DNA of 64,000 nt from Styela clava (GCF_964204865.1 NC_135254.1:10540001-10604000), one strand, 5' to 3'; numbered from the stretch's first letter, positions 6,845 through 54,940 are shown. Made by a program: numbers and translations. The notes: generated by a model from the letters alone, not told the origin.

Positions 6845-9800
6845 TTATTTAATATTGTCAATATTTGCATAGGGGTCATCGTTTACTTCAATGTCAGACC
6901 ATTCAGCATCTCCTGTGACATCGGAATTCTGATCTGTTTCAAGTTTATTGACCGTTGCATAAGTTACTTCATTGAAGTTCGAAGAATCATCTTTCTTGGG
7001 TTTCTGTACAACAGCAAGGGTCACTTTATTGTCGTCTCCATCTGAAAATGTTTCCTGTTTCACGGGGCCTTTCGTTTTAGTCTTCTGCACGGTAGCGTAA
7101 GTCGGACCAGGCACTAGCTTTTCATCAAAGGAATTTTCTGGTTGCGAATTTTTTTTAGAATCCTCAACATTGTGTTTTTGAACCGTTGCGTAAACCACAG
7201 GGGAGTTCCCGTCAAGATAACCAGAAACATTAATTTTTTCACTCTTTTTTTGCTTATCAACGACAGCGTATTGAATTTCTGATACATCTGCCGCATCCAA
7301 ATCTTTTGAGGATTTGTATAACTTTTTCGATTTTGTCTTGTTAACAGCAGTATATATAGCATTGTCGTTGCCTTCTGGGGTCACATCGTTTATCTGATTC
7401 TGATGGTTATCGGCAATGGCGTAGAGGGAATCTTGCCCGTTTGATGAGTCAACTTGATCTTCGGGTAAGTGAGAATTATTGTCTGCCTGTCCATCAAGGT
7501 TTGCAAACGTCTGATAACGAAGAGTTTCCGTATTTTGAGAATTGTCTCGACCTGATTCCACATCTCCGGGATCTGTAGCAGTAAAACATGTTAGTGATAA
7601 ATATTAATATGAAGCAGCTGTTTTGACACACTTGAAGCATTTTCGTTTGGAGGAGTTGGAAAATAGGTCGGAGCCATTCAGATTAACTGACTACAGATTT
7701 GAATACGGACTCATACACGCTATTACCTACTCGAGTTACCTATATTAATATAATCACCATAACTGAATGCATGATGAAGTTCATTAGAAACAACAATTCT
7801 GAATTTTTACGTGGAAAGATTCTATTTAGTATCGGTTGGTATCGTTGCAACAGGTTGTGATTTAAATGTAACATCTTATCTTGTTTTACGCTTCTCTGTG
7901 TAGTATTCCTATATGCTATATATTCTCAATATATTTCCCGCAAAATCACTTTTTTCTCATTAGGCATATAGTTCAAATAAGATAATCATATGGTGCACAT
8001 AGAAATGAGTATTCCTTTTTGTTTGTCATACATTTACTAGCATGTGGTAGACAGTAAAGTACAAGAATTCATCAACCCAGATAGAATACGTTGACGTAAT
8101 ACTTTAAATGAAGTTACATTAACTTACGATCTGACATTATATCCCTCGGATTAAGTTGATTTTCCATTTCTAACCCTTTATTGTAATTGCAACGATCTCC
8201 TGTGTTTATGATTCCGCGGCCTCTTCTGAAAGCAAAACTTTAGATTTTATGCATTCTCGGTGAAATGAGTAAACCCTTATTAAAAAGATATTTGGTATCC
8301 GTTCACTATTTATAAAAGATGTAATGTCATAATGTTGGATATATTACCTTTTTTTGAGTTGCTTTGAAAGTATAAAAACAATGATAAGTGCTAAAAGAAG
8401 AAACCCTCCGATAGTTCCCACGACTGGTTCAATGATTGATGTTTGTGCAGCGGGTGTAGATGGACGAAGAATTCCAATCGTCGAAATTTCAGGAATTTCT
8501 GTGTGAGATAATATAGGAATTAATATCAGTACAATATAAATGATCAGAAATTTGATTTAATACATTATGTTCATTTAAACAAGCTGACACATTTTCGCGA
8601 GCTGAAATTAAATTTAAAATATTTTGCAACGCTCACATTTGAAAATTAATCGTACGAAAGGTATTTGACTGCTTCATCCTGATGTTATACATTTGAACAT
8701 TCTAATTGGTCTTTTGATCGATGAACAAATGTTGGCCACGTTCTCACGTGCATTTTAATAAATGACTCAATTGTAGAAAAGGTGAAACTGATTGTATAAA
8801 CTTATGATTTGTTATGGTAAACTATTGCTAATACTATTATAATTATCCCACGTTTCGTTTGTATTTGAGTTTGCTTTCATTGCAGACTTTGCCATGATTA
8901 ACTCTGATCAAGTATAAATTGTTTCTTATTTGCAGCTACTAGTTTAGGATCGAACCCGTAAAATTATAAATTTCTGTTTTTTGTGCGATTTTCATCGTCA
9001 GCAAGTCACTTGAGTTAAAAGAAAGATATTAATGTAGTATTCGTAATTTTTGTTTCATTGTAGCCGTGCACCGGTACACCGGTAGTCATGGTAGTCATTA
9101 CGTCGGTGGGTTCTTCGTTTGTGGACGAGGTGGTTAACTCACCAGCAGTTGTGGTTAATGGAGATGTTGTTTCCGCAACAGTAGTCGTATAACAAGTTGG
9201 GTCTTTTGTACAATTTGCAGTCTGTTAAAAATATTCAATCAAACTAAAAGAAAATTGAAATTGATCAGTATTATTACAATTTCCAAACATGGCTTTTAAA
9301 TGGCAAAAGTTTCTTTAACATACCCGCAGAGCATTAACGAAGGCATGGTCAATAAAAGCATAATTGCTTTTATTGGAAGCGCATGGCTTGCAGGAAGCGT
9401 ATGGCGTATGGAGCGTATGAAATTCAAATTAATGGGGTCCAGACTGAGGAAGTTGCAAGTCACATTTAAAATAAGAATGAGGTGATGAAATCATTTTAAT
9501 ACGTTAGTCAATCTGTTTCGATTAATAACTAATTACGACTAAACTGACTTAAATAAATTTACCTGAGTGGCAATGCTAGATGTAAATAAATATTGTCGTT
9601 GATGAAGTTGAGTAAAAAAATTGGTACTCAATTAACTCACAGATGGCGGATACCGGAACGTAGTATGTGTACTAGATTAGGATAGGGCCATAATTTTAAG
9701 TACAAATAAGACGCGAGTCACTTGGCTAATCCTCGAACTCGTAATAAATCTAAAATAAGCAAAAATTGAAATATAATTATGGCCTAACCCTAACCTGGTA

Positions 9801-11671
9801 CACACACTACGTTCGGGTGTCCGCCATCTCGTTCACATACTTCGGGAGCGCTCAAAAATCTATCAAACGATAGCTATATAATGTAAGTGTGTCTCAACAG
9901 TGTGTACGAGAAAAATGTTTTATTTCCATTTGTAATTTTTAGTTTTGCTACGACACAGCAATAAACATGCTACAAGTAAATAAAATCCTAGGCTCATGTA
10001 ATACTTAGCAATACAGCTAGGTAATGAGCTAGCAGTTTGAACAGAAACACAATCATAATGAGTTACAAATGGAAAACAAGTTTACTTCCGATTGTGTTGA
10101 CGTATCATTGCATGAGTATGGACCAATTCTACCGCTGTCAACACAAATTCTGTCACGCAGCTTTATTCCCGGGCATTCACAACTTCCCCGAGACTCCCAT
10201 GATCCCCAATTCCAGCCTGCAGAAACATATTGATTAAAATAAGAGTTGTATTCTTCATAAGTAAGTATTCTGAAGCAATTTTATATCAGTAAATTTATAT
10301 CAAGATGAACTGTTAATACAGTATAAACGATAGAAACGATAGCATAGCTATGTAAGGTATAAACAGTGATAAGATGACATTACTAAAAACATTAACAGGA
10401 TCTTTTCTGAAATAAAAGCTAATCAAATGTAGTTAACTTTGTACGGAAAAAAGAGACAGGTTTTTCACAGTTTTATTTTATCAAAAACTGAAAGTTTTGC
10501 TGACAGTAAATTATTAATATTGTGCAACTGCTTTTTTTAATAAGCATAATTTATCTAATTGAACATTGGACCAAGATAACCCAATTCTCAATTTTCTTTA
10601 AGAGAATTTGCTCAGAGCAAAGTTAGTCGCACTCACTCGGAAAAAAAAAAACAATCGTCTCTTGATCAAAATACGGCCGGTCGCTGAAATGCCAAGTGCT
10701 ACTGAAATCATACAGTATTTTGTTGGTGCAATAGGCAACAGCGAATAACTATTGATGCGATTCTTGAAACACTTCAAATCAATGCTATAAACTATGGAAC
10801 AGTAAACATTGGCATGAGTAACATGAACTAAACTTAAGTCGATGGCAATATTATATATGAATAGAGTTATTTTCATATAAAAAAAAGAGACATAATTTAC
10901 AAATTGAGTATATATAAATTTATTACAAATAATGCTTGTTACCGATCAATCGTTGGCAGACAAATCCTGTTAGGGCGTTCGCAGCGCATTCGACGTCATA
11001 CCACGGTAGATTTGCATCATACGTGTACCACCATCCCATAGCAACACAATGTTCAAGTAGATGATCAGAAGGTTCTCCTAAGTACCAGTTAGTGTAGTTT
11101 AGTTCTGAATTGTCTTTCCATATGAAGGTATTTTTTGTGACAAATTCCTTTAATCCAATATAAAATCCATAGGGTTCTCCTGTAGACAATAAAATGCCTT
11201 AGAGTAATAAAAAGTTTTGTCGCGTGTAATATCTATTGTATGTAAACATGATTGGTTGGGACTGTTGGACATTATTGTGAACGTGTACAAATATATGAAC
11301 ACTGACGATTTAAGAATAAAAACAAAAATTCGGGGGAAAACGTAAAACGTCCTATATACCTGAGGTATTTGAGACTTGAGTCTGAATAAACGTTTGAATC
11401 TCACTAGTTTTTATCATTGCCATCTCACCATCATTGTTTTTACAGAATGTTTCAGCATCAGCATAACGTTTTTTATCATCTTTTCCAGATACGTAGTATT
11501 GGTAACTTCCAAATCCATTCCACTCACCTCTATCTGGTCGCAAAAATTAAGGGTTCAGGAATAAGCACATAATTTGAAAGACGTGAGGATATATAGTATA
11601 TGCCAACCTGCGCTAACGACGGCAACCATCCAAGCAAATATTCCAACGAATATCGAAAGATTCTCCTTCAT
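6845..11671 (-). CDS. Receptor 1: SP-CTLD-TSP1-mucin-TM-ITIM-rich tail (~553 aa), putative inhibitory lectin receptor
   Basis: Phase-compatible GT-AG exons: 11671-11608 (MKENLSIFVGIFAWMVAVVSA), 11533-11360 and 11179-10943 (CTLD: FC..IGL..W..EPS..C..WYD..C..C), 10216-10086 (TSP1 WNWGSWESRGSCECPG..RDRIC), 9221-9143 (T-rich; this donor could lie further 3'), 8498-8348 (TM VVGTIGGFLLLALIIVFIL then KQLKK), 8225-8128, 7572-6845 (IQYAVV, VVYATV, VTYATV). Total 1662 nt, open. Confidence 0.88.
9641..9829. mobile_element. MITE with ~55-bp terminal inverted repeats in intron 4 of receptor 1
   Basis: agatggcggataccggaacgtagtatgtgtactagattaggatagggccataatt versus aattatggcctaaccctaacctggtacacacactacgttcgggtgtccgccatct. 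Absent from the homologous intron of receptor 2. Confidence 0.75.
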
Positions 11672-21166: not shown

Positions 21167-24100
21167 TCAAGCATCATATTCATTTTCAGGCATTGAATTG
21201 ATGTACGGATGTTCTTTTGTTGTACGATCATTCATTTCTTCGTATTGATGATCTCCGTCTTTTATTTCTTCATAATTATGTGGGATTTCATAATTACCTT
21301 CTTTTTCTTCTCTTAACTCATTATTTCGGGAGTTCAATTGGGATGTTTGAATTTTATCATATTTTTCATGAGAAACCGGGACGTCATTAACAACCTCATT
21401 CATCTCTGAAAGACGTTGTGGTTGAGTGTCGTTTTTTTTTTTAGAAATTCCCCTGTGAACAACAATAAACTTGAAATAATTCACAAGTAGGCTTTTGGAT
21501 AGAAACAATGGATTTTTTTTTTCTTGAATTGCTTCTGTTATAGAGGACTTAGCTTATATATTAGCTAAACGTCATCGTGATCGGACGAAAATGTTAGCCC
21601 AGTATTCAAGACATTGTTCCGGACATTGAGATTGTTACTGCTGTATAAAAGATTTTATTTTACTTATTCAATTGAGAGGAAATACTCCAAATCGTTCAAA
21701 ATATACACATTTTATTGTAGTATCGATCATTTCTCACCTCATTACTTTGCATCTACGAATCAGCAAACCAATTCCGAATAAAATAGCTGCGAGAATCAAT
21801 GTGACTATGGATGAGATAATTGCAACCAATAAATTGTTGTGGTCTGCAATATAATATGTAGTAAGAATCATAAACCTTAAAAATCTATCAGGAATTTACC
21901 ACGCAACAATACTGAAGAGAGGTTAAACATGAGTTGTAAACATCGAAAAGTCAGTGAGCATATTGTACCACAAAGTGGTAGTTTGAAAACCCTAATATTG
22001 TGCACTTAGAACTAATGTCTCTTATAAGCTGTAAGCTATATAATCTTACCACCAGAAGCCATTGTGGTAGTAGTGATTGCACTAGTGAGAAAGATAGTGT
22101 TTATCTCAGTAGTTTTTGTGTCATTTGCAATGGCAGACAATGTGGAAGTATGTGTCATGTAAGTAGGAGTTGTAAATTCTTGGTATAAATTTGTTGCTGT
22201 CATTTCAACAGTTGCCGCAGTGGACGTTGTATTACAGGCAGTATCTCTTGAACAATTGATCGTCTGGAAAAAGTAATTCTGATTTAGCAATTTTTTGATT
22301 TAAATGTACGATAACTTTTATATATTCTAATAGCTATTCAAATCCTAAGTTTAATGTTCTTTAAAATGTTGAGCAAATTTGAAAATCCCTATAGAAATAT
22401 TAATTAACGTGCTAATGAAAATTATTGAAAGTGAATAATGTATCAGAAACTTCTTAGGAGAATTTGTCAATAGCAAGGTCGGTCCTGCGCTCTGAATCAG
22501 AATTATTGGAGATTCACTATTAAAACTGCGGCTTATACACTAAAATATTGAGAACTATTAAATCAACGTAGAATGATAATCATTTTTCTTTCGATTACCT
22601 CAGAGGTCAGAAATTATCAAATTACACCAAAATGAGATATTTATTTTTATTTTATACCTCAAAATTGAATCCAATGCAAATATTGGTCCCCGCCATTCCC
22701 AAGGCAATGCATGTTCGATTTCGTACTTTCATCATTGAGCTGCAGTTACATGTACTCCACGATGACCAAGTTTCCCAGTAACTTCCTACATAGTGTTAAC
22801 ATAATCTTAACTGAGAATTAACGTGCGCTTCCTCTTTTTATCGTTTTCATTGATGATGCATATTAAAACTATATCAGCATAGTATAACATAGTGAACAGC
22901 AACGGCGTGAGCCAGTGAAAACATTCGTAACATTTTGCAGCCACAAACAACTACCACCGAAGACGGGTTTCACATGAGTTGTAAAAAACAGAAAGTCAGT
23001 GAGCATATTGTACCATAAAATAGTAGTTTGGAAAATCAAATTTTGTGCACTCAAGACTAATGTCTCTTATAATTTGTAAGCTATATAATCTTACCACCAG
23101 AAGTCGTTGTGTTAGTAGTGATTGCACTTGTGGGAAAAAGAGTGTTTCTCTCCGTAGTTTTTAAATCATTTGCATTGGCAGACAATGTGGAAGTTTGTGT
23201 CATGTCTGTAGGAGTTGTAAATACATGATATATATTTGTTGCTGTCATTTCAACAGTTGCCGCGGTGGACGTTGTACTACAGGCAGTGTCTCTTGAACAA
23301 TTGGTCGTCTGGAGAAAGTAATTGTGATTTAGCAAATTTTTTTTATTCAATATATGTACGATAATTTTTTATATATTCCAACAGGTATTTAAATGCGTTG
23401 TTTAATGTTTTTCAAACAGTTACAGAAATTTAAAAATTTTCACCAAAATATTATTTCACACACTAATGAAAAATATCGAAAATGAATAATTTAGATGAAT
23501 CAGAAACTTTTGAGGAGAACTTGTCAATAGTCAGGTCCTGCGCCCTAAATTGGAATTATTAGATATTCAATTTTAGGACTGCGGATTATACACTAAAATA
23601 GTAAAAATTATCAAAACAAGATAGAATGATAATCATTTTTCATTTTGAGCACTTTAAAAGATCAGAAATTATTATATTACTACAAAGAGTGGCATTTTTC
23701 TATATCTTACCTCAAAATTAGAACCAATGCAAACATTGGGCCCCGTCCTTTCCGAATTAATGCATGTTCGATTCCGTACTTTCAACATTGAGCTGCAGTT
23801 ACATATACTCCACGATGACCAGGTTTCCCAGTATCTTCCTACATAGTGTGAACATAATCTTAACTCAGAATTAACGCGCGCTTACTCTTTTCATCGATTT
23901 TGTTGATGATGCATATTCCAACTATATCATATTCTGATTTTTCTGCTCTTTGAATTTGTTGATTTTCAAATAATTATAGATTCAGAGCTAAATTTATTTT
24001 ATCATAGTTGAAACTAAGTTAAGTTGGAGTTCTAATATATGTGTTCTATTTATATTCCTGTTCATGTTTTGCGTTATACTAAAATCCTATTTTTAACATT

Positions 24101-27100
24101 CATACTGTTCTAATCACACAGCCAAAGCATATTCGCGCTAGAGTTGATTGTATTGAAGCTATGTTGAATAAAAATGAAAACAGTTTGACCTGTCACCTCA
24201 TTACTTCTTCTTTTTATTTTTTCAACTTCAATATTAGAAAAAATATGTTAAAAATTCGTTTTTCCTCGCTGTCGCAAGTTATTTTACTCACCGATATGGC
24301 GTTGACACACCAATCCTTTTAACCCTGTTGCTCCTGTGATACAGTCTATCGTATGCCATAGAAGATTTGCGTCATAAGTTTTTTGTTCACCTATCGATAC
24401 ACAAGTATCTGTTACACTGATATGATTGTTTGGTTCTCCATCATCCCAACGAGTGAATGAAAGGTTTGTTCCGTCGTTCCATTGAAACATCGACTTTGAT
24501 TTGTCATAAACAAGTCCAATGTAGAATGTATATGGTTCTCCTGTAATAAAACATATCATATTGCTTTATACTGCTTATATACACGCATAGACAAGTGTTT
24601 TAGTGAGAGTCATGCGGTTGAAGCGTTAGCCTTAATTGAGTTGGCATTGCAAATTACGCATCTCAGTTTCAAATACCATCTCACGTCACTCATGGGTGTA
24701 ATAAATTTGCCAGACAGTGTTAAAACTAACACAGCTTCTTATATATTGTTAAATATCAGTGGTTTTTGTACATGGACCTTTTCGCGTAAATAAGCGTTAT
24801 ATCTCAAAAGGTACGGAATTATTGCATTCCGTTCGTAATGAGTATACATTGACTTTAAAATTCAGAATAATGCACGTACCTGATCCATCAGAAATGAGTG
24901 TTGTTATAAATCCTTGAGTCATTTCATTCTTTATTAATGCTAATTCGCCCTCTCTCTCTTTGAAAAATGTTTTTGAAACTTCATAAGATCTTGAAATACC
25001 ACCCGGTGAAACGTAATATTCATAACTTCCATTAGGAAACCATTTTCCTCGACCTGTTTCACAAATGAGAAATCAAATGATTGAATAATATCAGTATTTC
25101 GAGAAATGCGCAGTGAAAAAGCTCGGTTGAGCGAGATAGCATCAGTTATTGCAGGCACTTGCTTTAAATTAAGTACTAAAGTGAATAATAAAGAAAAATG
25201 TTGATATATTGACGGATTTAATAGTTTCGATTATAAGTCGTTATAGCACCTTTCGATTAGAGTCAAGTCAAGTTTAATTTTTCCAAACAGTAAATTAACA
25301 ACAATCGAACACAAATTACGAGAAACTAATAATTACACAGATTTACTGGGGAAATAGATTTACTGGTGGTCGTGGGGGACCAAAGCTGGTTATCGAGCAG
25401 CGACAGCAAAGGTTCAAATATGTTATTTAAATTTGAGCTTGGAATCTACTGTCTTTGACGCTGTCTTTCAACATTATCAGTAAACGACAACGCTAACCTA
25501 GCTTACCGGTTATATACTCTTTTAATATTGCTTTTCAACCAATAAAAAAATATATTCGTGCCAGAGTTACAATAAAAAAAAATTATACAGTTTCACTAGA
25601 GACAGATCATTGATAGAAATTGGTTCATGACTTATGTGAAAGAGAATAACAGAGCCCATTGTTCATATCGCTATCTCATTTTCGCAAAAATTGGTCAGTT
25701 TGCTGGGAAATGAAAACATAACAACCTAATTCTAGAATGAGTTTTCATTCTCACCTAGTGGAGTCAAAGACATAGTTGCATTGCAGGAAACGGATGGCGT
25801 GCATATCTAAAAACAACGTTCATTTTGTTCAATCGTACATGTACGTGTTTTAATCAAATTAACTCTAACTCTTTATTACAAGATCAAAAAAAGAGAAATG
25901 TAACAATGAAATCCAAATTAATTGGGCGCAGACTGAAAGATTGGCTAGTCACATTTAAAATTAGAATGGAATTATGGAATTATTTTGATACGTTAGTCAA
26001 TCTCTTTCAATTAACAACGAAATACAACTAAACTGACTAAAGTTTCCTGAGTGGCAATGTCATGTGTAACTATTATTGTCGTATTTGTGAGGTATAGTTC
26101 TGGAACAACACACTAATCGACATGCTGGAACTTTATAAAATCCTGAACTTTAATGTAATGCTTATCAATACAGCTAGGTAATGAGCAAGCATTTAAAACG
26201 AAAACACAATTATAATGAGTTGTATTTGTAAAACAAGTTTACTTTTGACTCTGCTGTCGTATCATTGCATGAGTATGGACCAATTCTTCCACTGTCAACA
26301 CAAGTTCGGTTTCGTTGCCTCATTCCCGGGCATTCACAGCTACCCCAAGACTCCCATGATCCCCAATTCCAGCCTGCAGAAACATACAGAGAAAATTTAT
26401 TTTGTACAACTGAGTATTCTGAGAATTTTATATCAGTAAATGTAAATCAAGATGAACTGTTAACACAGTATGAGCGGTAGAAACAATGGCAAGGTATATA
26501 AATAGTGATAAGATCAAAAGCAGTTAGTTAGTTTTGCTTGCAGTAAATTTATGATATTGTGAAACTGCTTTCTCTAAACATAATTTATCCAGTTAAATTG
26601 GAAACATTAGACCCAGATAACCCAATTCTCAATTTTCATTAAGAGATTTTGCTCGAGGCAAACTTAGTCGCACTCATTCGGAATAAAGTATACTAGTATT
26701 TGATAAAAATACGGGCGATCGCTGAAATGCCAAGTGTCACTAACTGCAATTATACAGTATTTTGGTGGGACAATAAACACCAGCGGATGCCTGCTGATGC
26801 GTTACTACAAGCAGTTCAAATCAATGCTATAATGAGCATAATCATGGGCAGTAAATCCTGACATGGTTACAATTTACCAAATTGGCCTTAAAATATATAA
26901 ATAGGTATTTGCAAAAAGATTATGACTCTTCTGTTTAACAAAGTTCAGACAACCATTTATTGCATAAAACATCAGGCTGTATTCACAAAAAATACATAAT
27001 CTACAAATTTAGTATACATTTATTACAAACAAATGTTGTTACCGATTAATCGTTGACAGACAAATCCAGTTGGATAATTCGCAGCGCATTCGACGTCATA

Positions 27101-28345
27101 CCACGGTAGATTTGCAAAATACGCGAGAAACCACCCCATAGCACCACAAGATCGGGAACTCTCACTAGAAGGTTCTCCTGTGTTCCAGTTAGTGTAGGTT
27201 AGTTCTGAATTGTCATTCCATATGAAGGTATTACTTGTGCCAACTTCCTTTAAGCCAATATAAAATCCATATGGTGTTCCTGTAAGTGTAGACAATAAAA
27301 TGCTGTAGAGCAGGATTTTCCAAACTGGGTCCTCGGGCCCGCGGTACGTGTTGACTGCACAGAGAGTCCGCAGCGATATGAAAAGATTGTGATTAATCTT
27401 TAACGATTGATCTTAATCAAAAAGTCATAGCATCTTTTTGGTTCAGCGTTGTGGACAAATATTGCAGTCAGTAAAAGCGATTTTAATTTCCTTGCTATTT
27501 TCGACGACCTACATTGTGAGGCAGCATTTTCAGCTTTTACCAATATGATGACAAAATACAGGTCGGGACTTGCCGTATAATCGAACCTACAAGTTTACTT
27601 GTCACAAATTGCTCGAGAATCGATAAATTGAGCAGTGAAAAGCATTATTACCGTTTATGTTGTTATGTTGACAAAAAAAAATTCTTTCCTCGTTGGTTAG
27701 GCACAAAAACTGATACGGGGTCTGTCAAACCTAAGATTCAAAAATAGGGGTCAGGCTCAAAAAGTTTGGGAAACCCTGCTTTAGAGTAATAAAAAGTTTT
27801 GTCGTGTGTAATATTTGTTGTATGTAAACATGACTGGTTGAAACTGTTGGAGATAAATGAAATTATATTCTTATATATGACGACTGACGAATTAAAAATT
27901 CTCAAACAATCGTATGGAGTATTCTAACGCAAATCCCAAAACGCACGAACAAAGATTCTAATGAACATAACGTTAAATACTCTTAAGCAAATTCATTCCG
28001 GGATCTGGGGTGAAGCGTAAAATGTACTGTTTACCTGAGGTAGCTGAGACTTGATTCTGAATAAACATTTGAATCTCGCTAGTTTTTATCATTGCCATCT
28101 CACCATCAGTGTTTTTACAGAATGTTTCACCATCAACATAGGATTTTTTATCATCTTTTTCAGATACGTAGTATTGGTAACTTCCAAATGCATTCCACTT
28201 ACCTCTACCTTGTCGTAAAATAAAGAGTTTATGAATAAGCACATCATTTGAAAGACATGGTGATATATTATATATACCAACCTGCGCTAACGACGGCAAT
28301 CATCCAAGCAAATATCCCAACGAATATCAAAAGTTGCTTTCTCAT
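21167..28345 (-). CDS. Receptor 2: SP-CTLD-TSP1-CTLD-(TSP1-mucin)x2-TM-short Tyr-motif tail (~718 aa), putative activating lectin receptor
   Basis: 13 phase-compatible exons: 28345-28282, 28208-28035, 27279-27043, 26373-26243, 25806-25755, 25053-24880, 24540-24292, 23838-23711, 23308-23095, 22785-22658, 22263-22050, 21843-21738 (TM LLVAIISSIVTLILAAILFGIGLLI), 21452-21167 (YDKI, YEIP, YEEI, YEEM, YINS). Total 2157 nt, open. Confidence 0.85.
21930..23930 (-). repeat. Intragenic ~1.05-kb tandem duplication of the TSP1 exon plus mucin exon
   Basis: The 128-nt TSP1 exon and 214-nt mucin exon, with flanking intron sequence, occur twice at an offset of about 1045-1053 nt. Confidence 0.9.
27311..27778. 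mobile_element. hAT/Charlie-like MITE in intron 2 of receptor 2
   Basis: TIRs caggattttccaaact / agtttgggaaaccctg and 8-bp TSD ctgtagag/ctttagag. The empty site (ccttagag) is seen in receptors 1, 3 and 4. Confidence 0.88.
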
Positions 28346-36610: not shown

Positions 36611-36833
36611 ATTTAGTTTATACTACTGTCGAATAACTTATTCTCGAACGTAAAGGCAGTCAGCTAACTAAAGAAAATCATTCGAGCACTATGTTTTTAC
36701 GTTGTTACGTATGGTTGTTCTCTTTTGGTACGAGACTAAATCATTTAGTTTATACTTTGCCGAATAACTTATTGCCCAAAGTAAGGGCAGTCAGCTAACT
36801 AAAGAAAATCATTCGAACATGTATGTTTTTACG
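36611..36833. repeat. Local direct duplication of ~90 bp (also at ~50030-50252)
   Basis: atttagtttatact...cagtcagctaactaaagaaaatcattcga...tatgtttttacgt occurs twice. The homologous sites at ~19910-20000 and ~63485-63570 have a single copy. Confidence 0.8.
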
Positions 36834-37820
36834 TGGTGACGTATGTTTTACGTCACAACTCACAGATACCGCAATCAATGTTATGCTACGGTTCACATCA
36901 TGAGAAAGCGTTTACCAAGATTTTATATGTGATACTTGTTTATATTGGAAAGATCTAGTCTAGGTCATAATTGAACAAATACATTCAATTCGGATTATTA
37001 ATTTGAGATTATATTGTTACAAACATTATTTATATATAATCTGTTTGACTTATATTCATAGTTTTGTACAAGACAAAAACAATAATGGACCATACAAGTA
37101 TGTTCTGAATTTGGTTATATTTTAAAGTTTCTATAACGAACACTTGAACGAGTGTGAACTCATCACTTAGTCCTATAGCATTATAAAATAAGACGATTCC
37201 ACCAAGCTTCAAATTATTGAATACCAATTATTGTAAGAAAAATGTCAGTGGCACCTACAAACAAAAAAGAAACACACTTAAAAAAATATGTTACTAATTT
37301 AGAAGGAAACAGGATGGATGCTATCAGGGTAAAGCTTTCAACAAAATATGACTTGAAATTAACAATATTTGTTGAAAACACTTCAGAGTTAGACAATAGT
37401 GCTTGTGTACTTGCTTTCATTTATGGTAGGAAATAGAAAACCAAGGAATATCACAATACATCCATAATACAATACATCAACTTCATTTATATTACGGGAT
37501 TCTTAAAAAAGTGGCAAATGTATTGCAAAGAAACCATTACCAGCCTAGATCATGTTATGCCAGTTATACGAATCCAGATCCACAGTTGCCTTTATAATGA
37601 AAGATCTAAATTTTACATCTCCGATATGCAATGTTATTTTTGTTTGAATAAGTATCAGCTAATACAAGCGCAGAAGTTCAAGAACAAGTAGTAATGGTTA
37701 AAATTACAATGTTTGTATGCGTTTCAGAATGTATAACAAGATTCACGACTAAACAGGAGTGGCAATGGATGATTGCTATTTACAATCAATCTGTCAAGAA
37801 TCATATTCATTTTTAGGCAT

Positions 37821-40800
37821 TTAATTGATGTACGGATGTTCTTTTGTTGTGCTATTATTCATTTCTTCGTATTGATGATCTCCGTCTTTAATTTTCTCAT
37901 AATTATGCGGGATTTCATAATTTTCTTCTTTCTCTTCTCTTAACTCATTATTTCCGGAGTTCAGTTGTGATGTTTGAATTTCATCGAAGTTTTCATGATA
38001 ACTCGGGACGTCATTAACAACCCTATTCATCTCTGAAAGACGTTGTGGTTGAGTTGCGATTTTTTGAGAATTCCTCCTGTAAACAAAAATTAAGTTAGAA
38101 TTAATTAATAAGTAGGATTTTAAATAAGAAACATTGGATTTGTTTGCGGAATTGCTTCTACCATAGAGGAGTTAGAAAAAACAATCGACGAAAATGTTAG
38201 AGCCCAGTATTGCAGACATTGTCCCAGACATTGAGATTGCGCTTACAGCTGTACAAAGAGACACACCTTACTGATTCAATTTAAGAGTGAATACTCCAAA
38301 TTTTCGGTAAATATACACATTTTGTTGTAGTATCGAACATTTCTCACCTCATTATTTTGCATCTACAAATCAGCGAACCAATTCCAAATAAAATGATTGC
38401 AAGAATCAATGTGGCTATGGATGAGACAATTGCAACCAATAAATTGTCGTGGCCTGCAATATATTTCAACATATAGTAAAAAGAATCATAAACGTTAAAA
38501 ACAATTTTCAGCATTGAAGACAGGTTAAACATGAGAATCAGAAAGTCAGTGAGCATTTTATGGAACCACAAAATAGTAGTTTTAAAAACTCTTAATTTTG
38601 TGCATTTAAGATTAATGTCTCTTATAATTTGTAAGCTATATAATCTTACCACAAGAAGTCATTGTGGTAGTATTGATTGCACCAGTGGGAAAGAAAATGT
38701 TCATCTCCGTAGATTTTGTGTTATTTGCATTGGCAGACAATGTGGAAGTATGTGTCATGTCATTGAGAGTTGTAAATTTATGATAAATATTTGTTGTTGT
38801 CATTTCAGCAGGCGCCGCGGTGGACGTTGTATTACAGGCAGTGTCTCTTGAACAATTGATCGTCTGAAGAAAGTAATTGTGTTTAGCAATTTTTCGATAC
38901 AATATATGCACGATAATATTTGTATATTCCAACATTTATTTAAATCCGAAGTTTAATGGTTTAATGTTCTTCAAAAAGTTAAACAAATTTAAAAATGCTC
39001 ACAAAAATATTAATTCACACGCTTATGAAAAATAACGAAAGTGAATAATTTAGATAAATCACAACTTTTTAGGAGAATTTGTCAATAGCCAGGTCGGGCG
39101 CCCTGAATTAGAACTACTAGATATTTACTGTTACGACTGCGGCTTATACGCTATAAAATAGTAAAAACTATTCAAACAACATAGAATGATGATCCTTTTT
39201 CTTGTGAGCCCTTTAAAAAATTAGAAATTATCAACTTACTACAAAAAATGGCATTTTTTTTGTTTCTTACCTCAAAATTAGAACCAATGCAAATATTGGG
39301 CCCCGTTCTTCCCGAGTCAATGCATGTTCGATTGCGTACTTTCATCATTGAGCTGCAGTTACATGTACTCCACGATGACCAAGTTTCCCAGTAACTTCCT
39401 ACATAGTGTAAAGATAATCTTAATTCAGAATTACCGCGCGCATACTCTTTTCATCGATGTTGTTGATGATGCATATTCAAACTATATCATATTCTTAGTT
39501 TTCTGCTCATTCAAATTGTTGTTTTTTTACAGTCAATCAATAGTTTACTTATCACCAAAATGAACAGACACTTGAATCATACAAAAACTAGGAAAAAAAC
39601 ATGAGACATCGATGAAATGAAACACGCCATATCGGTGAGTAAAATAATTTACGAATTGTTAACGTATTCTTCTAATACTTGAAATAAAGTAAATATGAAG
39701 TGATGACGTGACATGTCAAACTGCTATATTTATTCAAAATAGCTTCAATGTAATCAAGGATTTGTTCAAAGGGTATTGTTTTAAAACAAGTTTTTTTGCC
39801 TGTTTCGATTAGAATGACTGTATTTTTTTACGTAGTAAATAGGTTTAAACATAAATAGGAAAAATTGCCAATTGCTTCTTATTCGTATACAAATATACAA
39901 ATATCGATGACTTGCTTATAAAGGCCTTCTCAAGCTGTAGTGCAATACGTCCGCAAACATGGTCGGCGGAGAAAGACGTAAACGATAAGCCATTACGTGA
40001 ACCTTTGTGTCGACAAGGATTCCAACATTCTTGCACATTGTCACATCACTCATGAGGCCAGGGGCGAATATACAATTGGGCAAGGTAGGCTAAAGCCTTG
40101 AGGCCTCTAACCTCGTGGGCCTTAACAATCAATTTTGAACTCATATTAATTTAAAATCGTTTTTGATTTGTGAAGGCTTGTTCCAGGATTATGTCACTTT
40201 AAAACTTTATAGTTATCATATTTGTTATTCAGGTTAATTTTTCCAAATATTTACCGAATAAAAGATTGAAAAGTTAAAATATGGCCGAATAAATGAATTT
40301 GTAATAATACATAAACTTGAAATCCCTATTATGGCGTTATATCCCATCGATGACAGTGAAACTTGAAGCAAACACTATAATAATCATTTATGCACTAATA
40401 ATTATTCAAGAGTAGTTAGTTTTGAACGGAATATTTATGATAGAATTCAGCTGTTCGGTTTTGAGCAGTTTTTTTTATCAAAAACTGAAATTTCTGCTGT
40501 CAGTAAATTTATAATATTGTGCGATCGCTGAAATGCCAAGTGCTACTGACATCATACATTATTTTGTTGGTGCAATAAGCAACAGCGAATACCTGTTGAT
40601 GCGATACTTTAAATTATTTAAATTAATGTTTTAAAGTTTATATAAACTATCGAGCAGTAAACATTGGCATGATTAAAATGAACTAAATTAAAGTTAATGG
40701 CATTAAAATACATAAATAGTTATTTGTATAAAGAAAAAAGGACATAATCTACAAATTAAGTAGACTTATTACAATAAAAGTTTGTTACCCATTAATCGTT

Positions 40801-41517
40801 GACAGACAAATCCAGTCGGTGCATTCGCATCGCATTCGACGTCATACCACGGTAGATTTGCATAATACGCGTTAAACCACCCCATAGCAACACAAGGTTC
40901 AGGTTTATCAACATGAGGTTCTCCTAAGTTCCAGTTATCGTAGGTTAGTTCTGAATTGTCCTTCCATTTGAAGGTATTGCTTGTGCCAACCTCCTTTAAT
41001 CCTATATAAAATCCATAGGGTTGTCCTGTAGACAATAAAATGCCTTAGAGAAAAAAAAAGTTTTGTCGTGTGTAATATTTGTTGTATGTAAACATGATTG
41101 GTTGGGACTGTTGGACATTATTGTAAACATGTACAAATATATGAACACTGACGATTCAAGAATTAAAACAAAAATTCGGGGGAAAACGTAAAATGTCCTA
41201 TATACCTGAAGTAGCTGAGACTTGATTCTGAATAAACGTTTGAATCTCGCTCGTTTTTATCATTGCCATCTCACCATCATTGTTTTTACAGAATTTTTCA
41301 CCATCAACATATGATTTTATATCATCTTTTCCAGATACGTAGTATTGGTAACTTCCAAATGCATTCCACTCACCTCTATCTGGTCGCAAAAATAAAGGGT
41401 TCAGGAATAAGCACATAATTTGAAGGACGTGAGGATATATAGTATATGCCAACCTGCGCTAACGACGGCAACCATCCAAGCAAATATTCCAACGAATATC
41501 AAAAGATTCTCCTTCAT
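37821..41517 (-). CDS. Receptor 3: SP-CTLD-TSP1-mucin-TM-short Tyr-motif tail (~392 aa)
   Basis: Exons 41517-41454, 41379-41206, 41025-40789 (EPH..WYD), 39398-39271 (WETWSSWSTCNC..RNRTC), 38863-38650, 38453-38348 (TM), 38076-37821 (YEIP, YEKI, YEEM, YIN*). Total 1179 nt, open. Confidence 0.87.
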
Positions 41518-51238: not shown

Positions 51239-54200
51239 TTAATTGATGTACGGATGTTCTTTTGTTGTGCTATTATTCATTTCTTCGTATTGATGATCTC
51301 CGTCTTTAATTTTCTCATAATTATGCGGGATTTCATAATTTTCTTCTTTCTCTTCTCTTAACTCATAATTTCCGGAGTTCAGTTGTGATGTTTGAATTTC
51401 ATCGAAGTTTTCATGATAACTCGGGACGTCATTAACAACCCTATTCATCTCTGAAAGACTTTGTGGTTGAGTTGCGATTTTTTGAGAATTCCTCCTGTTA
51501 ACAAAAATTAAGTTAGAATTAATTAATAAGTAGGATTTTAAATAAGAAACATTGAATTTGTTTTCGGAATTGCTTCTACCATAGAGGAGTTAGACAAAAC
51601 AATCGACGAAAATGTTAGAGCCCAGTATTGCAGACATTGTCCCAGACATTGAGATTGCGCTTACAGCTGTATAAAGAGACACACCTTACTGATTCAATTA
51701 AGAGTGAATACTCCAAATTTTCGGAAAATATACACATTTTGTTGTAGTATCGAACATTTCTCACCTCATTATTTTGCATCTACAAATCAGCGAACCAATT
51801 CCAAATAGAATGATTGCAAGAATCAATGTGGCTATGGATGAGACAATTGCAACCAATAAATTGTCGTGGCCTGCAATATATTTCAACATATAGTAAAAAG
51901 AATCATAAACGTTAAAAACAATTTTCAGCATTGAAGACAGGTTAAACATGAGAATCAGAAAGTCAGTGAGCATTTTATGGAACCACAAAATAGTAGTTTC
52001 AAAAACTCTTAACTTTGTGCATTTAAGATTAATGTCTCTTATAATTTGTAAGCTATATAATCTTACCACAAGAAGTCATTGTGGTAGTATTGATTGCACC
52101 AGTGGGAAAGAAAATGTTCATCTCCGTAGATTTTGTGTTATTTGCATTGGCAGACAATGTGGAAGTATGTGTCATGTCATTGAGAGTTGTAAATTTATGA
52201 TAAATATTTGTTGTTGTCATTTCAGCAGGCGCCGCGGTGGACGTTGTATTACAGGCAGTGTCTCTTGAACAATTGGTCGTCTGAAGAAAGTAATTGTGTT
52301 TAGCAATTTTTCGATACAATATATGCACGATAATATTTGTATATTCCAACATTTATTTAAATCCGAAGTTTAATGGTTTAATGTTCTTCAAAAAGTTAAA
52401 CAAATTTAAAAATGCTCACAAAAATATTAATTCACACGCTTATGAAAAATAACGAAAGTGAATAATTTAAATATATTCCAACTTTTTAGGAGAATTTGTC
52501 AATAGCCAGGTCGGGCACGCTGAATAAGAACTACTAGATATTTACGTTTACGACTGCGGCTTATACGCTATAAAATAGTAAAAACTATTCAAACAACATA
52601 GAATAATGATCCTTTTTCTTTTGAGCCCTTTAGAAAATTAGAAATTGTCAACTTACTACAAAAAATGGCATTTTTTTTGTTTCTTACCTCAAAATTAGAA
52701 CCAATGCAAATATTGGGCCCCAATCTTCCCGAGTCAATGCATGTTCGATAGCGTTCTTTCATCATTGAGCTGCAGTTGCATGTACTCCATGATGACCACG
52801 TTTCCCAATATCTTTCTGCACATTGTAAAGATAATCTTAATTCAGAATTACCGCGCGCATACTCTTTTCATCGATGTTGTTGATGATGCATATTCAAACT
52901 ATATCATATTTCTATTTTTCTGCTCATTCAAATTGTTGTTTTTTTACAGTCAATCAATAGTTTATTTATCACCAAAATGGACATACACTTGAATTAAACA
53001 AAAACTAGAAAAAAAAAGAGACATCGATGAAATGAAACACGCCATATCGGTGAGTAAAATAATTTACGAATTGTTAACGTATTCTTCTAATACTTGAGAT
53101 AAAGTAAATATGAAGTGATGACGTGACATGTCAAACTGCTATATTTATTCAAAATAGCTTCAATGTAATCAAGGATTTGTTCAAAGGGAATTGTTTTAAA
53201 ACAAGTTTTTTTGCCTGTTTCGATTAGAATGACTGTATTTTTTTACGTAGTAAATAGGTTTAAACATAAATAGGAAAAATTGCCAATTGCTTTTTATTCG
53301 TATACAAATATACAAATATCGATGACTTGCTTATACACGCCTGCTCAAGCTGTAGTGCAATACGTCCGCAAACATGGTCGGCGGAGAAAGACGTAAACGA
53401 TAAGCCATTACGTGAACCTCTGTGTCGACGAGAAGTCCAACATTCTTGCACATTGTCACATCACTCATGAGGCCAGGGGCGAATATACCATTGGGCAAGG
53501 TAGGCTAAAGCCTTGAGGCCTCTAACCTCGTGGGCCTTAACAATCAATTTTGAACTTATATTAATTTAAAATCGTTTTTGATTTGTGAAGGCTTGTTCCA
53601 GGATAATGTCACTTTAAAACTTTAAAACTAGTTATCATATTTGTTATTCAGGTTATTTTTTTCAAATATTTACCGAATAAAAGATTGAAAAGTTAAAATA
53701 TGCCCGAATAAATGAATTTGTAATAATACATAAACTTGAAATCCCTATTATGGCGTTATATCCCATCGATGACAGTGAAACTTGAAGCAAACACTATAAT
53801 ATTCATTTATGCACTAATAATTATTCAAGAGTAGTTAGTTTTGAACGGAATATTTATGATAGAATTCAGCTGCTCGGTTTTGAGCAGTTTTTTTTATCAA
53901 AAACTGAAATTTCTGCTGTCAGTAAATTTATAATATTGTGCGATCGCTGAAATGCCAAGTGCTACTGACATCATACATTATTTTGTTGGTGCAATAAGCA
54001 ACAGCGAATACCTGTTGATGCGATACTTTAAATTATTTAAATTAATGTTTTAAAGTTTATATAAACTATCGAGCAGTAAACATTGGCATGATTAAAATGA
54101 ACTAAATTAAAGTTAATGGCATTAAAATACATAAATAGTTATTTGTATAAAGAAAAAAGGACATAATCTACAAATTAAGTAGACTTATTACAATAAAAGT

Positions 54201-54940
54201 TTGTTACCCATTAATCGTTGACAGACAAATCCAGTCGGTGCATTCGCAGCGCATTTGACGTCATACCACGGTAGATTTGCATAATACGTGTGAAACCACC
54301 CCATAGCAACACAAGGTTCAGGTTTATCAACATGAGGTTCTCCCAAGTACCAGTTATCGTAGGTTAGTTCTGAATTGTCCTTCCATTTGAAGGTATTGCT
54401 CGTGCCAACCTCCTTTAATCCTATATAAAATCCATAGGGTTGTCCTGTAGACAATAAAATGCCTTAGAGAAATGAAAAGTTTTGTCGTGTGTAATATATA
54501 TTTGTTGTATGTAAACATGATTGGTTTGGACTGTTGGACATTATTGTAAACATGTACAAATATATGAACACTGACGATTTAAGAATAAAAACAAAAATTC
54601 GGGGGAAAACGTAAAATGTCCTATATACCTGAAGTAGCTGAGACTTGATTTTGAATAAACGTTTGAATCTCGCTCGTTTTTATCATTGCCATCTCACCAT
54701 CATTGTTTTTACAGAATTTTTCACCATCAACATATGATTTTATATCATCTTTTCCAGATACGTAGTATTGGTAACTTCCTAATGCATTCCACTCACCTCT
54801 ATCTGGTCGCAAAAATAAAGGGTTCAGGAATAAGCACATAATTTGAAAGACGTGAGGATATATAGTATATGCCAACCTGCGCTAACGACGGCAACTATCC
54901 AAGCAATTATTCCAACGAATATCAAAAGATTCTCCTTCAT
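51239..54940 (-). CDS. Receptor 4: SP-CTLD-TSP1-mucin-TM-short Tyr-motif tail (~392 aa), close paralog of receptor 3
   Basis: Exons 54940-54877, 54802-54629, 54444-54208, 52815-52688, 52280-52067, 51870-51765, 51494-51239, all open. Confidence 0.87.

What the first reader, a model, noticed from the sequence alone, without database searches (positions are those of the whole stretch)
6845..54940. Paired inhibitory/activating receptor family: similar lectin heads on opposite-type tails
Seen: receptor 1 has a ~275-aa tail with canonical ITIMs (IQYAVV, VVYATV, VTYATV). Receptors 2-4 have an unrelated TM exon and a ~90-100-aa tail with YEEI/YEKI-KDGDHQ-YEEM plus YIN. The first CTLDs of all four are clearly homologous. 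Known: ITIM consensus is I/V/L/SxYxxI/L/V (SHP recruitment). YxxI/L-x6-8-YxxL/I is an ITAM, YEEI is the optimal Src-SH2 ligand, YxxM binds PI3K p85 and YxN binds Grb2. Inference: a convergent analogue of vertebrate paired receptors (Ly49, KIR, Siglec), built from type-I CTLD-TSP1 proteins.
Basis: partly seen in the sequence, partly recalled or inferred. Interest (0 to 1): 0.85.

Follow-up and report, generated by a model that had tools for sequence, protein, structure and literature searches.

The report
Lectin receptors with two opposite tails
Four neighbouring genes of the sea squirt Styela clava encode cell-surface lectin receptors with closely related outer heads but one of two unrelated inner tails, one with inhibitory-type and one with activating-type tyrosine motifs; this resembles vertebrate paired immune receptors, but what the tails actually do is untested.

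Summary
The window (Styela clava, C5:10,540,001-10,604,000) carries four intact minus-strand type-I receptor genes. R1 has a signal peptide, one C-type lectin domain, a TSP1-like module, a stalk, a TM segment and a 281-aa tail with three canonical ITIMs. R2-R4 have the same kind of head on an unrelated TM exon and a 91-100-aa tail (YEIP, YE[E/K]I-x6-YEEM, YIN).

They belong to a ~340-kb cluster of 24 heads, about 15 genes with the short tail and 8 with the ITIM tail. TM type is strictly linked to tail type.

New here:
- RNA contigs from two studies give GT-AG joints linking every exon of R3, from signal peptide to tail.
- A tree of the 5' module, introns included, rejects a single origin of ITIM-type heads (AU p = 3.7e-7). 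R1's head nests with R3/R4.
- pN/pS exceeds 1 only in the ligand-binding loop.
- The genome encodes SHP-type and Syk-type genes.

Limits: the short tail is not a canonical ITAM, its TM has no charged residue, TSP1 is below Pfam's cut-off in the window copies, and no signalling, ligand or cell type is known.

The scan had already found this family in neighbouring windows (s1-822872, s1-812120). Verdict: a real, expressed, paired-receptor-like family. It is a new variant of a known kind.

The parts
6848..7572 (-). R1 last exon: long tyrosine-repeat tail with ITIMs IQYAVV, VVYATV and VTYATV; stop codon at 6845-6847
   Evidence: Open frame and motifs. 100% match to RefSeq P0010 residues 313-553. 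Eight related tail exons in the genome, all in this cluster.
8128..8225 (-). R1 juxtamembrane cytoplasmic exon (RGRGIINTG...)
   Evidence: GT-AG sites keep the frame. Matches P0010 residues 279-312. Always found with the long tail.
8348..8498 (-). R1 TM exon (I-type; VVGTIGGFLLLALIIVFIL then KQLKKRR)
   Evidence: Strictly linked to the long tail in all 8 genes.
9080..9221 (-). R1 Thr-rich stalk exon (my model). P0010 is 21 aa shorter and gave no match of 97% or more for its stalk stretch
   Evidence: Splice-site and frame search guided by paralog P0001. Not checked with RNA.
10086..10216 (-). R1 TSP1-like exon (WNWGSWESRGSCEC...)
   Evidence: Matches P0010 residues 159-202 at 100%. No Pfam hit on its own. 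77% identical to the first TSP1-like exon of R2.
10943..11533 (-). R1 lectin head: CTLD exon a 11360-11533, intron, CTLD exon b 10943-11179
   Evidence: Lectin_C matches on both exons and 3.9e-14 on P0010.
11608..11671 (-). R1 signal-peptide exon (MKENLSIFVGIFAWMVAVVSA)
   Evidence: 98.4% nt identity to the R3 exon.
21170..28345 (-). R2, the A-type gene with two CTLDs. Signal peptide 28283-28345, CTLD1 27044-28206, TSP1-like 26243-26371, CTLD2 24299-25051, TSP1 23711-23833, stalk 23099-23302, second TSP1 22658-22783, second stalk 22054-22260, TM 21740-21841, tail 21170-21445
   Evidence: tblastn exon map, no stops in any match. Tail alignment. Splicing not checked.
37824..38076 (-). R3 tail exon (coding part): YEIP, YEKI-KDGDHQ-YEEM, YIN then stop. 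RNA contigs continue as 3' UTR down to about 37150
   Evidence: Joint 38075|38347 in all four runs of two studies. Frame check.
38348..38453 (-). R3 TM exon (A-type; LLVAIVSSIATLILAIILFGIGSLI, no charged residue)
   Evidence: Joints on both sides in all four runs. Always found with the short tail.
38650..38863 (-). R3 stalk exon (Thr/Asn-rich, several NxT/S sites)
   Evidence: Joints 38452|38649 and 38863|39271.
39271..39398 (-). R3 TSP1-like exon (WETWSSWSTC...)
   Evidence: Joints 38863|39271 and 39397|40788. TSP_1 at 20.2 bits, below the 21.6 cut-off.
40789..41379 (-). R3 lectin head: CTLD exon a 41206-41379 and exon b 40789-41025
   Evidence: Joints 41024|41205 and 41379|41454. Query for the head census.
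41454..41517 (-). R3 signal-peptide exon (an upstream in-frame ATG lies at 41538)
51242..54961 (-). R4, a near copy of R3 (96.6% nt over 7.4 kb). Signal peptide 54878-54961, CTLD 54209-54803, TSP1-like 52688-52810, stalk 52068-52274, TM 51767-51868, tail 51242-51493
   Evidence: RefSeq P0016 (LOC144422796) maps here. Exon map. Self-comparison of the window.

Best explanation
This is a segment of a fast-evolving ('birth-and-death') tandem cluster of type-I lectin receptors in Styela clava that works like a paired receptor family. All members share a 5' module: promoter, signal peptide and first CTLD. Its ligand-binding loop is diversifying. That module is joined to one of two alternative 3' modules, which have been exchanged between lineages by recombination.

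The I module (own TM exon, a juxtamembrane exon and a ~240-aa exon) carries a periodic array of (V/I/T)xYA(T/V)V motifs. After ligand-driven clustering and phosphorylation by a Src-family kinase, these most likely dock the tandem-SH2 phosphatase (the SHP-type gene on C8) and dampen the cell.

The A module (own TM exon and an ~84-93-aa exon) carries an acidic tyrosine cluster: YEIP, YE[E/K]I-x6-YEEM and YIN. This most likely docks Src-family SH2, PI3K p85 and Grb2, and possibly the Syk-type kinase through the ITAM-like pair, and activates the cell directly without an adaptor chain.

Shown: gene structures, splicing and transcription of the A-type gene R3, family-wide linkage of TM and tail, motif conservation, head exchange between tail types, a raised pN/pS in the binding loop, and presence of the effector genes.

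Inferred: phosphorylation, which SH2 proteins bind, opposite outcomes, and the cell type and ligand.
For: - Splicing: GT-AG joints at 41379|41454, 41024|41205, 39397|40788, 38863|39271, 38452|38649 and 38075|38347 in RNA contigs. The two tail-side joints are in all four runs of two studies. Several intron bins have zero depth. The joined frame is open for 392 aa.
- RefSeq models join lectin heads to both tail types.
- Census: 24 heads, 16 short-tail exons and 8 long-tail exons, all on C5 10.51-10.85 Mb. TM type is strictly linked to tail type.
- Motifs are kept across paralogs and are unlikely by composition alone (p = 0.007 and 0.009).
- Head exchange: in the 5'-module tree (818 columns, 19 genes) R1 nests with R3/R4 at 100/99 support. 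Well-supported branches force at least 3 changes of tail type. One clade of I-type heads is rejected (AU p = 3.7e-7).
- The R1 and R3 5' regions are 90.6% identical over 4.2 kb, and the similarity stops about 265 bp after CTLD exon b.
- Selection: pN/pS is 1.3-1.8 in windows across LGEPHVDKPEPCVAMGWFNAYYANLPWYD and 0.08-0.9 elsewhere in the head. Tails are at 0.58-0.60.
- Effectors: SH2-SH2-phosphatase exons lie within 4 kb on C8. A 615-aa ORF has two SH2 domains plus a tyrosine kinase.
- Context: the related styelid Botryllus uses clustered ITIM/hemITAM receptors with similar xAYAIV motifs and expresses Src, Syk, SHP-1, PI3K and Grb2 homologs (PMC12582321).
Against: - No canonical ITAM occurs in any short tail, because the second motif is always YxxM.
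- The A-type TM has no charged residue.
- 3 of 16 short tails elsewhere in the cluster also match the ITIM pattern.
- All the tyrosine motifs also fit YxxPhi sorting signals.
- The closest solved lectin domains are those of endocytic mannose-receptor-family proteins.
- Paralogs are young (dS ~0.15), so motif conservation among them is weak evidence. Tail dN/dS of ~0.6 shows only mild constraint.
- No relative of either tail was found outside S. clava, so deep conservation cannot be used.
- No A/I pair has near-identical heads; the best cross-type identity is 90% aa.
- The tissue of the RNA runs is unknown, and the runs are only guessed to be RNA.
It rests on a RefSeq prediction.
Confidence: 0.5

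Rival explanations
1. Both kinds of tail signal through phosphotyrosine, but not as an inhibitory/activating pair. The long tail is a multi-site docking scaffold of the PECAM-1, SIRP-alpha or Draper/MEGF kind. There SHP-2-type binding can promote signalling, adhesion or engulfment. The short tail is a co-stimulatory-type PI3K/Grb2 dock. The two types would serve different pathways or cell types rather than opposing each other on one ligand.
For: - The motif content is compatible with this reading.
- SHP-2-type phosphatases act positively downstream of many receptors (established knowledge).
- No A/I pair has heads more than 90% identical.
- I-type binding loops are much less diverse than A-type loops: 5 of 8 share EPSSDKPEP.
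Against: - Repeated exchange of heads between tail types is what paired families show.
- The same logic, ITIM versus an activating motif in clustered receptors, is documented in the related Botryllus.
Confidence: 0.2
2. The receptors are endocytic or scavenger lectins of the mannose-receptor type. The tyrosine motifs would be YxxPhi sorting signals read by clathrin adaptors. The two tails would send cargo along different trafficking routes, with no immunoreceptor-type signalling.
For: - The best solved-structure relatives are macrophage mannose receptor CTLDs (2.7e-21), the IgY receptor of the PLA2R family, PLA2R and Endo180. All are type-I endocytic lectins.
- YEEI, YEKI, YEEM and YATV all fit YxxPhi.
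- An acidic cluster flanks the short-tail tyrosines.
Against: - Five or six periodic copies of (V/I/T)xYAxV in a 240-aa tail are far more than sorting needs, and they fit the fuller ITIM/ITSM pattern.
- YxN at the extreme C-terminus and YxxP are not sorting motifs.
- The heads lack the sugar/Ca2+ residues expected of a classical uptake lectin: EPS/EPH/QPS and WYD instead of EPN/QPD and WND.
Confidence: 0.15
3. The family serves a non-immune recognition task in which fast evolution is also expected, such as gamete self-sterility, larval settlement or tissue adhesion. The resemblance to immune paired receptors would then be superficial.
For: - A diversifying binding loop and tandem birth-and-death evolution are also typical of reproductive recognition genes.
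- The tissue source of the RNA runs is unknown.
Against: - ITIM arrays and SH2-docking clusters are signalling devices typical of leukocyte-type receptors.
- Transcripts were found in runs of two separate studies, though the tissue is unknown.
Confidence: 0.1

Closest known systems
CEACAM1 / CEACAM3 and Fc-gamma-RIIB / Fc-gamma-RIIA (vertebrate paired receptors that signal through their own tails)
   Same: - Clustered paralogs with related ligand-binding heads.
- One form has a long tail with ITIM/ITSM. The other has different TM and cytoplasmic exons and an ITAM-like motif in its own tail, so no adaptor chain is needed.
- Heads are exchanged between the two forms by recombination.
   Different: - The head is a C-type lectin domain plus a TSP1-like module, not Ig domains.
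- The activating-type motif is YxxI-x6-YxxM with extra YxxP and YxN, not a canonical ITAM.
- Function is untested.
- There is no sequence homology to these families.
NK-complex and myeloid C-type lectin pairs (Ly49, NKG2A/C, DCIR/DCAR, Dectin-1 cluster)
   Same: - Lectin-fold heads that lack the classical sugar/Ca2+ residues.
- ITIM-bearing and activating members sit side by side in a rapidly duplicating cluster.
   Different: - Those are type-II proteins with N-terminal tails, and their activating forms use a charged TM residue to recruit DAP12 or FcR-gamma.
- Here the proteins are type I (signal peptide, C-terminal tail), the TM has no charged residue, and the nearest lectin domains by sequence are mannose-receptor-family CTLDs.
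Botryllus schlosseri Fester / FcoR families (PMC12582321)
   Same: - Same tunicate family (Styelidae).
- Clustered, fast-turning-over receptor genes.
- Tails with ITIMs of similar flavour (LAYAIV, VAYAIV, [A/D]VYxxV) or activating-type motifs.
- Swapping of motif-bearing exons.
- The signalling machinery is present.
   Different: - Those are Ig-superfamily proteins in which the recognition chain (FF) and the signalling chain (FcoR) are separate, adjacent genes.
- Here recognition and signalling are in one chain with a lectin head.
- Styela clava is solitary, and no allorecognition role is known for these genes.
Mannose receptor family (MRC1, PLA2R, Endo180, DEC-205)
   Same: - Type-I membrane proteins with one to several tandem CTLDs and tyrosine motifs in the tail.
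- They are the best sequence matches among solved structures.
   Different: - Those have an N-terminal ricin-like domain and an FNII domain, 8-10 CTLDs, a short endocytic tail, no ITIM array and no TSP1 module.
- They are single-copy conserved genes, not a diversifying cluster.

Membership tests
C-type lectin-like domain (Pfam PF00059) | Significant match to the Lectin_C profile over the whole domain | tested here: met
   P0010 (R1) scores 3.9e-14 / 53.7 bits and P0016 (R4) 1.4e-14 / 55.1 bits, against a cut-off of 22.6.
Classical Ca2+-dependent sugar-binding C-type lectin | EPN or QPD triplet plus the WND triplet that hold Ca2+ site 2 | tested here: not met
   All 24 heads read EPS/EPH/EPT/QPS and, with two exceptions (WFD, WSD), W-Y-D or W-Y-G at these places. 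The neighbouring unrelated CTLD exon at 2676-2879 does have EPN.
Thrombospondin type 1 repeat (Pfam PF00090) | Match above the curated cut-off (21.6 bits) | tested here: inconclusive
   R3's exon scores 20.2 bits, R4 17.1 bits and R2's first module 15.3 bits. R1 has no hit. The homologous module of paralog P0001 passes at 32.7 bits.
Paired inhibitory/activating receptors (functional class) | Clustered paralogs with closely related ligand-binding domains on different tails | tested here: met
   There are 24 heads in ~340 kb. Head identity is the same within and between tail types (82.2%, 83.7%, 81.2%). Heads were exchanged between tail types (AU p = 3.7e-7).
Paired inhibitory/activating receptors (functional class) | Inhibitory members carry the ITIM pattern (I/V/L/S)xYxx(I/V/L) in the tail | tested here: met
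   R1 has IQYAVV, VVYATV and VTYATV. The five full-length long tails (240-244 aa) have 1-4 ITIMs each, and three of them also carry TQYA[V/F]V, an ITSM pattern. The ITSM motif also survives in the two shortened copies. This is the motif level only; binding is not tested.
Paired inhibitory/activating receptors (functional class) | Activating members have a charged TM residue that recruits an ITAM adaptor, or a canonical ITAM YxxL/I-x6-8-YxxL/I of their own | tested here: not met
   The TM segment LLVAIVSSIATLILAIILFGIGSLI has no charged residue. None of the 16 short tails matches the strict ITAM, and 15 of 16 match only if M is allowed at +3 of the second motif.
Paired inhibitory/activating receptors (functional class) | Opposite signalling outcomes and shared or related ligands shown by experiment | not testable with these tools
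   No functional data exist. No paper on this family was found.
ITIM/ITAM signalling pathway present in the organism | Genes for a tandem-SH2 phosphatase (SHP type) and a tandem-SH2 tyrosine kinase (Syk/ZAP-70 type) | tested here: met
   SH2 exons at C8:10921780 and 10923767 plus a phosphatase exon at 10925693 lie on one strand. L024:416-2260(-) is a 615-aa ORF with two SH2 domains and PK_Tyr at 3.5e-83.

The most novel reading that the evidence does not exclude
The cluster is a lectin-based, single-chain counterpart of NK-cell receptor complexes in a solitary tunicate. Inhibitory members with conserved binding loops would read a self ligand. Rapidly diversifying activating members would read altered-self, allogeneic or pathogen ligands. 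New inhibitory/activating pairs would arise by swapping the TM-tail module onto existing heads. Together with other two-tail clusters that the scan noted on other folds in this genome, this would mean that the paired-receptor logic was widely deployed in the chordate lineage on non-Ig folds, independently of KIR, Ly49 and CEACAM.
Probability: 0.25. Interest if true: 0.8.

Novelty: new variant of a known kind. Interest (0 to 1): 0.6.

Why it matters
Tunicates are the closest living relatives of vertebrates, and solitary styelids show haemocyte-mediated allogeneic reactions whose receptors are unknown.

This family is transcribed. It has about 24 members, a diversifying binding loop and two interchangeable signalling tails. 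That makes it a concrete, testable candidate for such recognition.

It would also show that the inhibitory/activating pair design can be built in one chain on a type-I lectin scaffold. Because the two tail modules sit on near-identical promoters and heads (R1 versus R3/R4), the window offers a natural matched pair for chimeric-tail and phosphopeptide experiments.

If the tails turn out to be sorting signals or non-opposing docks, the family is still a clear example of module swapping in a fast-evolving lectin cluster, but it would be of ordinary interest.

Tried and rejected
- Tree of the CTLD1 exons alone (408 columns). Tail types were interspersed, but one clade of I-type heads was not rejected (AU p = 0.065). 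Adding the signal-peptide exon and introns resolved it.
- Tandem Repeats Finder on the R1 tail exon found nothing. The periodic xYA(T/V)V(Q/N)K units are visible only at the protein level, so any internal duplication is old.
- Pfam on the tail and TM exons gave only sub-threshold noise.
- Relatives of the tails elsewhere:
  - The long tail against 1.84 billion representatives found two clusters, both S. clava.
  - The short TM-plus-tail region found three S. clava proteins.
  - Whole protein P0001 found only S. clava proteins.
  - In the genome itself, neither tail occurs outside C5 10.51-10.85 Mb.
- A strict ITAM was searched for and not found in any tail.
- Motif conservation among paralogs was considered as evidence of constraint and largely set aside. 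The copies are young (dS ~0.15) and about half of all short-tail columns are invariant anyway.
- Extra divergence of CTLD exon b between R1 and R3 (84.8%, against 94% in intron 2 and upstream) could reflect selection. The first 260 bp of intron 3 are equally divergent (84.7%), so a mosaic boundary is an equal explanation.
- RNA support for R1 could not be sought.
- Joined spliced models were built only inside scripts from window coordinates, for frame checks and local tblastn. Those searches used single exons by reference or protein ids returned by the tools.

Full report
**What the window is**

The window is G000:C5:10,540,001-10,604,000, 32% G+C and without N. Proteins found with its sequences are NCBI RefSeq models named 'uncharacterized protein ... 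[Styela clava]' on a contig of the same length as C5. The organism is therefore the club tunicate Styela clava, as an earlier scan note suggested.

The window consists of four tandem units of about 13-17 kb that are 81-97% identical at the DNA level. Each unit holds one receptor gene on the minus strand.

**Gene models**

R3:
- RNA-derived contigs of four runs from two studies were laid on 37000-42500.
- They show six joints with CT..AC ends on the plus strand, which is GT..AG on the minus strand: 41379|41454, 41024|41205, 39397|40788, 38863|39271, 38452|38649 and 38075|38347.
- Depth is zero in several whole intron bins, so the runs behave as spliced RNA, although their records only guess 'RNA'.
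- The TM-tail joint and the stalk-TM joint are seen in all four runs. Single contigs of 237-336 nt with 3-5 differences cross them.
- Joined at the exact sites, the frame is open for 392 aa. It reads: signal peptide, CTLD (two exons), a TSP1-like exon, a Thr/Asn-rich stalk, a TM segment without charged residues, and a 91-aa tail.
- No single contig spans all exons. The evidence is a chain of overlapping joints, and at the 92% threshold some contigs come from paralogs.

R4 is a near copy of R3 (96.6% over 7.4 kb) and equals RefSeq P0016.

R1:
- It was modelled from canonical splice sites guided by the paralog P0001. The result is 574 aa.
- RefSeq P0010 maps at 97-100% to the same exons, apart from its stalk stretch, which gave no match of 97% or more.
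- R1 has a separate TM exon, a 33-aa juxtamembrane exon and a 241-aa last exon.

R2 has two CTLDs, three TSP1-like exons and a duplicated TSP1-stalk block before the A-type TM and tail. All exon matches are free of stops, but its splicing was not checked.

**Domains**

- Lectin_C is clear in R1 and R4.
- The TSP1 modules of the window copies fall just below Pfam's cut-off, while the homologous module of a paralog passes.
- The heads lack the EPN/QPD and WND residues of sugar-binding C-type lectins.
- By sequence they are nearest to CTLDs of the mannose-receptor family.

**Tails**

The R1 cytoplasmic part (281 aa) has 11 tyrosines:
- Three are in canonical ITIMs: IQYAVV, VVYATV and VTYATV.
- AIYTAV and PTYATV miss the pattern only at position -2.
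- VTLAVV is a decayed copy.
- The units recur every 22-31 residues as xYA(T/V)V(Q/N/D)K. No DNA-level tandem repeat remains.

The short tails read ...NYEIPHNYE(E/K)IKDGDHQYEEM....EHPYIN. R3/R4 stop there, and R2 continues with SMPENEYDA.

Composition-preserving shuffles give p = 0.007 for at least three ITIMs in the R1 tail. They give p = 0.009 for an ITAM-like pair in the R3 tail.

From the later stalk onward R1 and R3 share no meaningful similarity. The first residues of the stalk (ANCTKDPTCYTT against INCSRDTACNTT) are still homologous.

**The family**

Six-frame searches of the genome and an exon map of 23 fetched stretches give 24 first-CTLD heads, 16 short-tail exons and 8 long-tail exons. 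All lie on C5 between 10.51 and 10.85 Mb.
- The A-type stalk, TM and tail always occur together. So do the I-type stalk, TM, juxtamembrane exon and tail.
- Three long-tail copies carry stops or deletions, and one head has no tail. This is the pattern of birth-and-death evolution.
- Each of the five full-length long tails has 1-4 ITIMs. TQYA[V/F]V (TxYxxV, the ITSM pattern) is present in five of the seven copies.
- All 16 short tails keep YEIP and YIN, and 15 of 16 keep YE(E/K)I-x6-Y(E/K)EM.
- None has a strict ITAM. Three, none of them in the window, also match the ITIM pattern at a variable place.

Neither tail was found outside this cluster in the genome, nor outside S. clava in the protein collections. 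Those collections may lack other styelid proteomes.

**Do heads and tails travel together?**

- Mean head identity is the same within and between tail types.
- A tree of the two CTLD1 exons alone was poorly resolved, and one clade of I-type heads was not rejected (p = 0.065).
- With the whole 5' module (signal-peptide exon to CTLD exon b, introns included; 818 columns, 19 genes) the tree is well supported. R1 sits inside a 100/99 clade with R3, R4 and one more A-type gene. Six I-type genes form a clade whose sister is R2, and the eighth I-type gene lies elsewhere.
- Well-supported branches force at least three changes of tail type. One clade of I-type heads is rejected (AU p = 3.7e-7). The groups were defined by the tails before any tree was made.
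- The R1 and R3 5' regions are 90.6% identical over 4.2 kb, from the neighbouring VWA exon to about 265 bp beyond CTLD exon b. There the similarity ends.
- The 3' part of R3 instead matches R2 at 81-86%.

So R1 (ITIM tail) and R3/R4 (short tail) share a recent 5' module. The TM-tail modules have been re-assorted by recombination. This agrees with the scan note that R3/R4 look chimeric.

**Selection**

- Pairwise Nei-Gojobori estimates give dN/dS of 0.35 for CTLD exon a and 0.60 for exon b.
- A sliding window shows a single peak of pN/pS, 1.3-1.8, across LGEPHVDKPEPCVAMGWFNAYYANLPWYD. Values elsewhere are 0.08-0.9.
- By alignment to the Pfam profile and to mannose-receptor CTLDs, this stretch is the loop region that forms the primary binding site in C-type lectins (the mapping is inferred).
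- Tails are at 0.58-0.60.
- Caveats: pairwise counts ignore recombination and shared ancestry, and the loop region was first picked by eye before the sliding window confirmed it.
- I-type loops are less varied than A-type loops: 5 of 8 read EPSSDKPEP.

**Effectors**

The genome has SH2, SH2 and tyrosine-phosphatase exons within 4 kb on one strand of C8, which is the SHP architecture. It also has an intronless 615-aa ORF with two SH2 domains and a tyrosine-kinase domain, the Syk/ZAP-70 architecture.

In the related styelid Botryllus, Src, Syk, SHP-1, PI3K, Grb2 and Crk homologs are expressed where ITIM/hemITAM receptors act (PMC12582321).

**Interpretation**

The most likely reading (about 0.5) is a paired-receptor-like family. 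The long tail would recruit an SHP-type phosphatase. The short tail would dock Src-family, PI3K and Grb2 SH2 domains, and perhaps Syk through the ITAM-like pair, acting without an adaptor chain as in CEACAM3 or Fc-gamma-RIIA.

SH2 preferences for YEEI, YxxM and YxN are established knowledge (Songyang et al. 1993, cited from memory). Whether they hold for tunicate proteins is inferred.

The rivals are:
- non-opposing phosphotyrosine scaffolds (0.2);
- endocytic sorting signals on mannose-receptor-like lectins (0.15);
- a non-immune recognition role (0.1).

**Novelty**

- Paired ITIM/activating receptor clusters are known in vertebrates, and ITIM/ITAM-bearing clustered receptors are known in Botryllus and Hydractinia.
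- A single-chain, type-I CTLD/TSP1-like version in a solitary tunicate was not found in the searched literature.
- The genes are unnamed in RefSeq.
- The scan had already reported this same cluster from neighbouring windows (s1-822872, s1-812120). It also noted similar two-tail clusters on other folds in this genome.
- What is added here: RNA evidence of splicing, the statistical rejection of head-tail co-inheritance, the located pN/pS peak, and the presence of the effector genes.

Noticed in passing
window 14615-14803, 31248-31436, 44460-44648, 57765-57953 (+): A VWA-domain exon (PF00092, 1.9e-9) lies head-to-head about 2.9 kb upstream of each receptor's first exon. There are 14 copies in the cluster, 86-100% identical in protein. 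The four window copies differ by only 2-8 of 189 nt, so they are far better conserved than the lectin heads beside them. Whether it is a full gene co-duplicated with each receptor, a functional partner or a relic is open.
   Followed up: partly
window 2676-2879 (-) and 2120-2278 (-): A different CTLD exon with a canonical EPN motif (Lectin_C 6.4e-7). Downstream of it is an open frame with VYEEI and EYVIV. This is probably another lectin receptor gene between the cluster units.
   Followed up: no
L024:416-2260 (-) = G000:C5:24185215-24187059: An intronless 615-aa ORF with two SH2 domains and a tyrosine-kinase domain (Syk/ZAP-70 architecture). It is on the same chromosome piece as the receptor cluster, 13.6 Mb away.
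   Followed up: partly
G000:C8:10921780-10925824 (+) (L025): Two SH2 exons followed by a tyrosine-phosphatase exon within 4 kb, the architecture of an SHP-type phosphatase. One search also lists many tandem phosphatase-domain exons on C1, C2 and C3.
   Followed up: partly
window 39804-40033: One RNA contig (230 nt, low depth) lies inside the 1.39-kb intron 4 of R3. R2 has its first TSP1-like exon and second CTLD at the corresponding place. It may be a relic exon used now and then, or a transcribed repeat.
   Followed up: no
window 38807|39271 versus 38863|39271: Run X5 shows a joint that enters the R3 stalk exon 56 nt further in (ends GC..AC, one contig). It may be an alternative splice or a paralog. 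RefSeq also lists stalk-length isoforms for I-type paralogs (P0001, P0003, P0004).
   Followed up: no
window 16800-17700, 33400-34300, 46700-47800, 60200-61000: Repeated intergenic blocks with open frames of 100-157 aa and no Pfam match (two were tested). They recur in each tandem unit and are probably remnants of a mobile element carried along by the duplications.
   Followed up: partly
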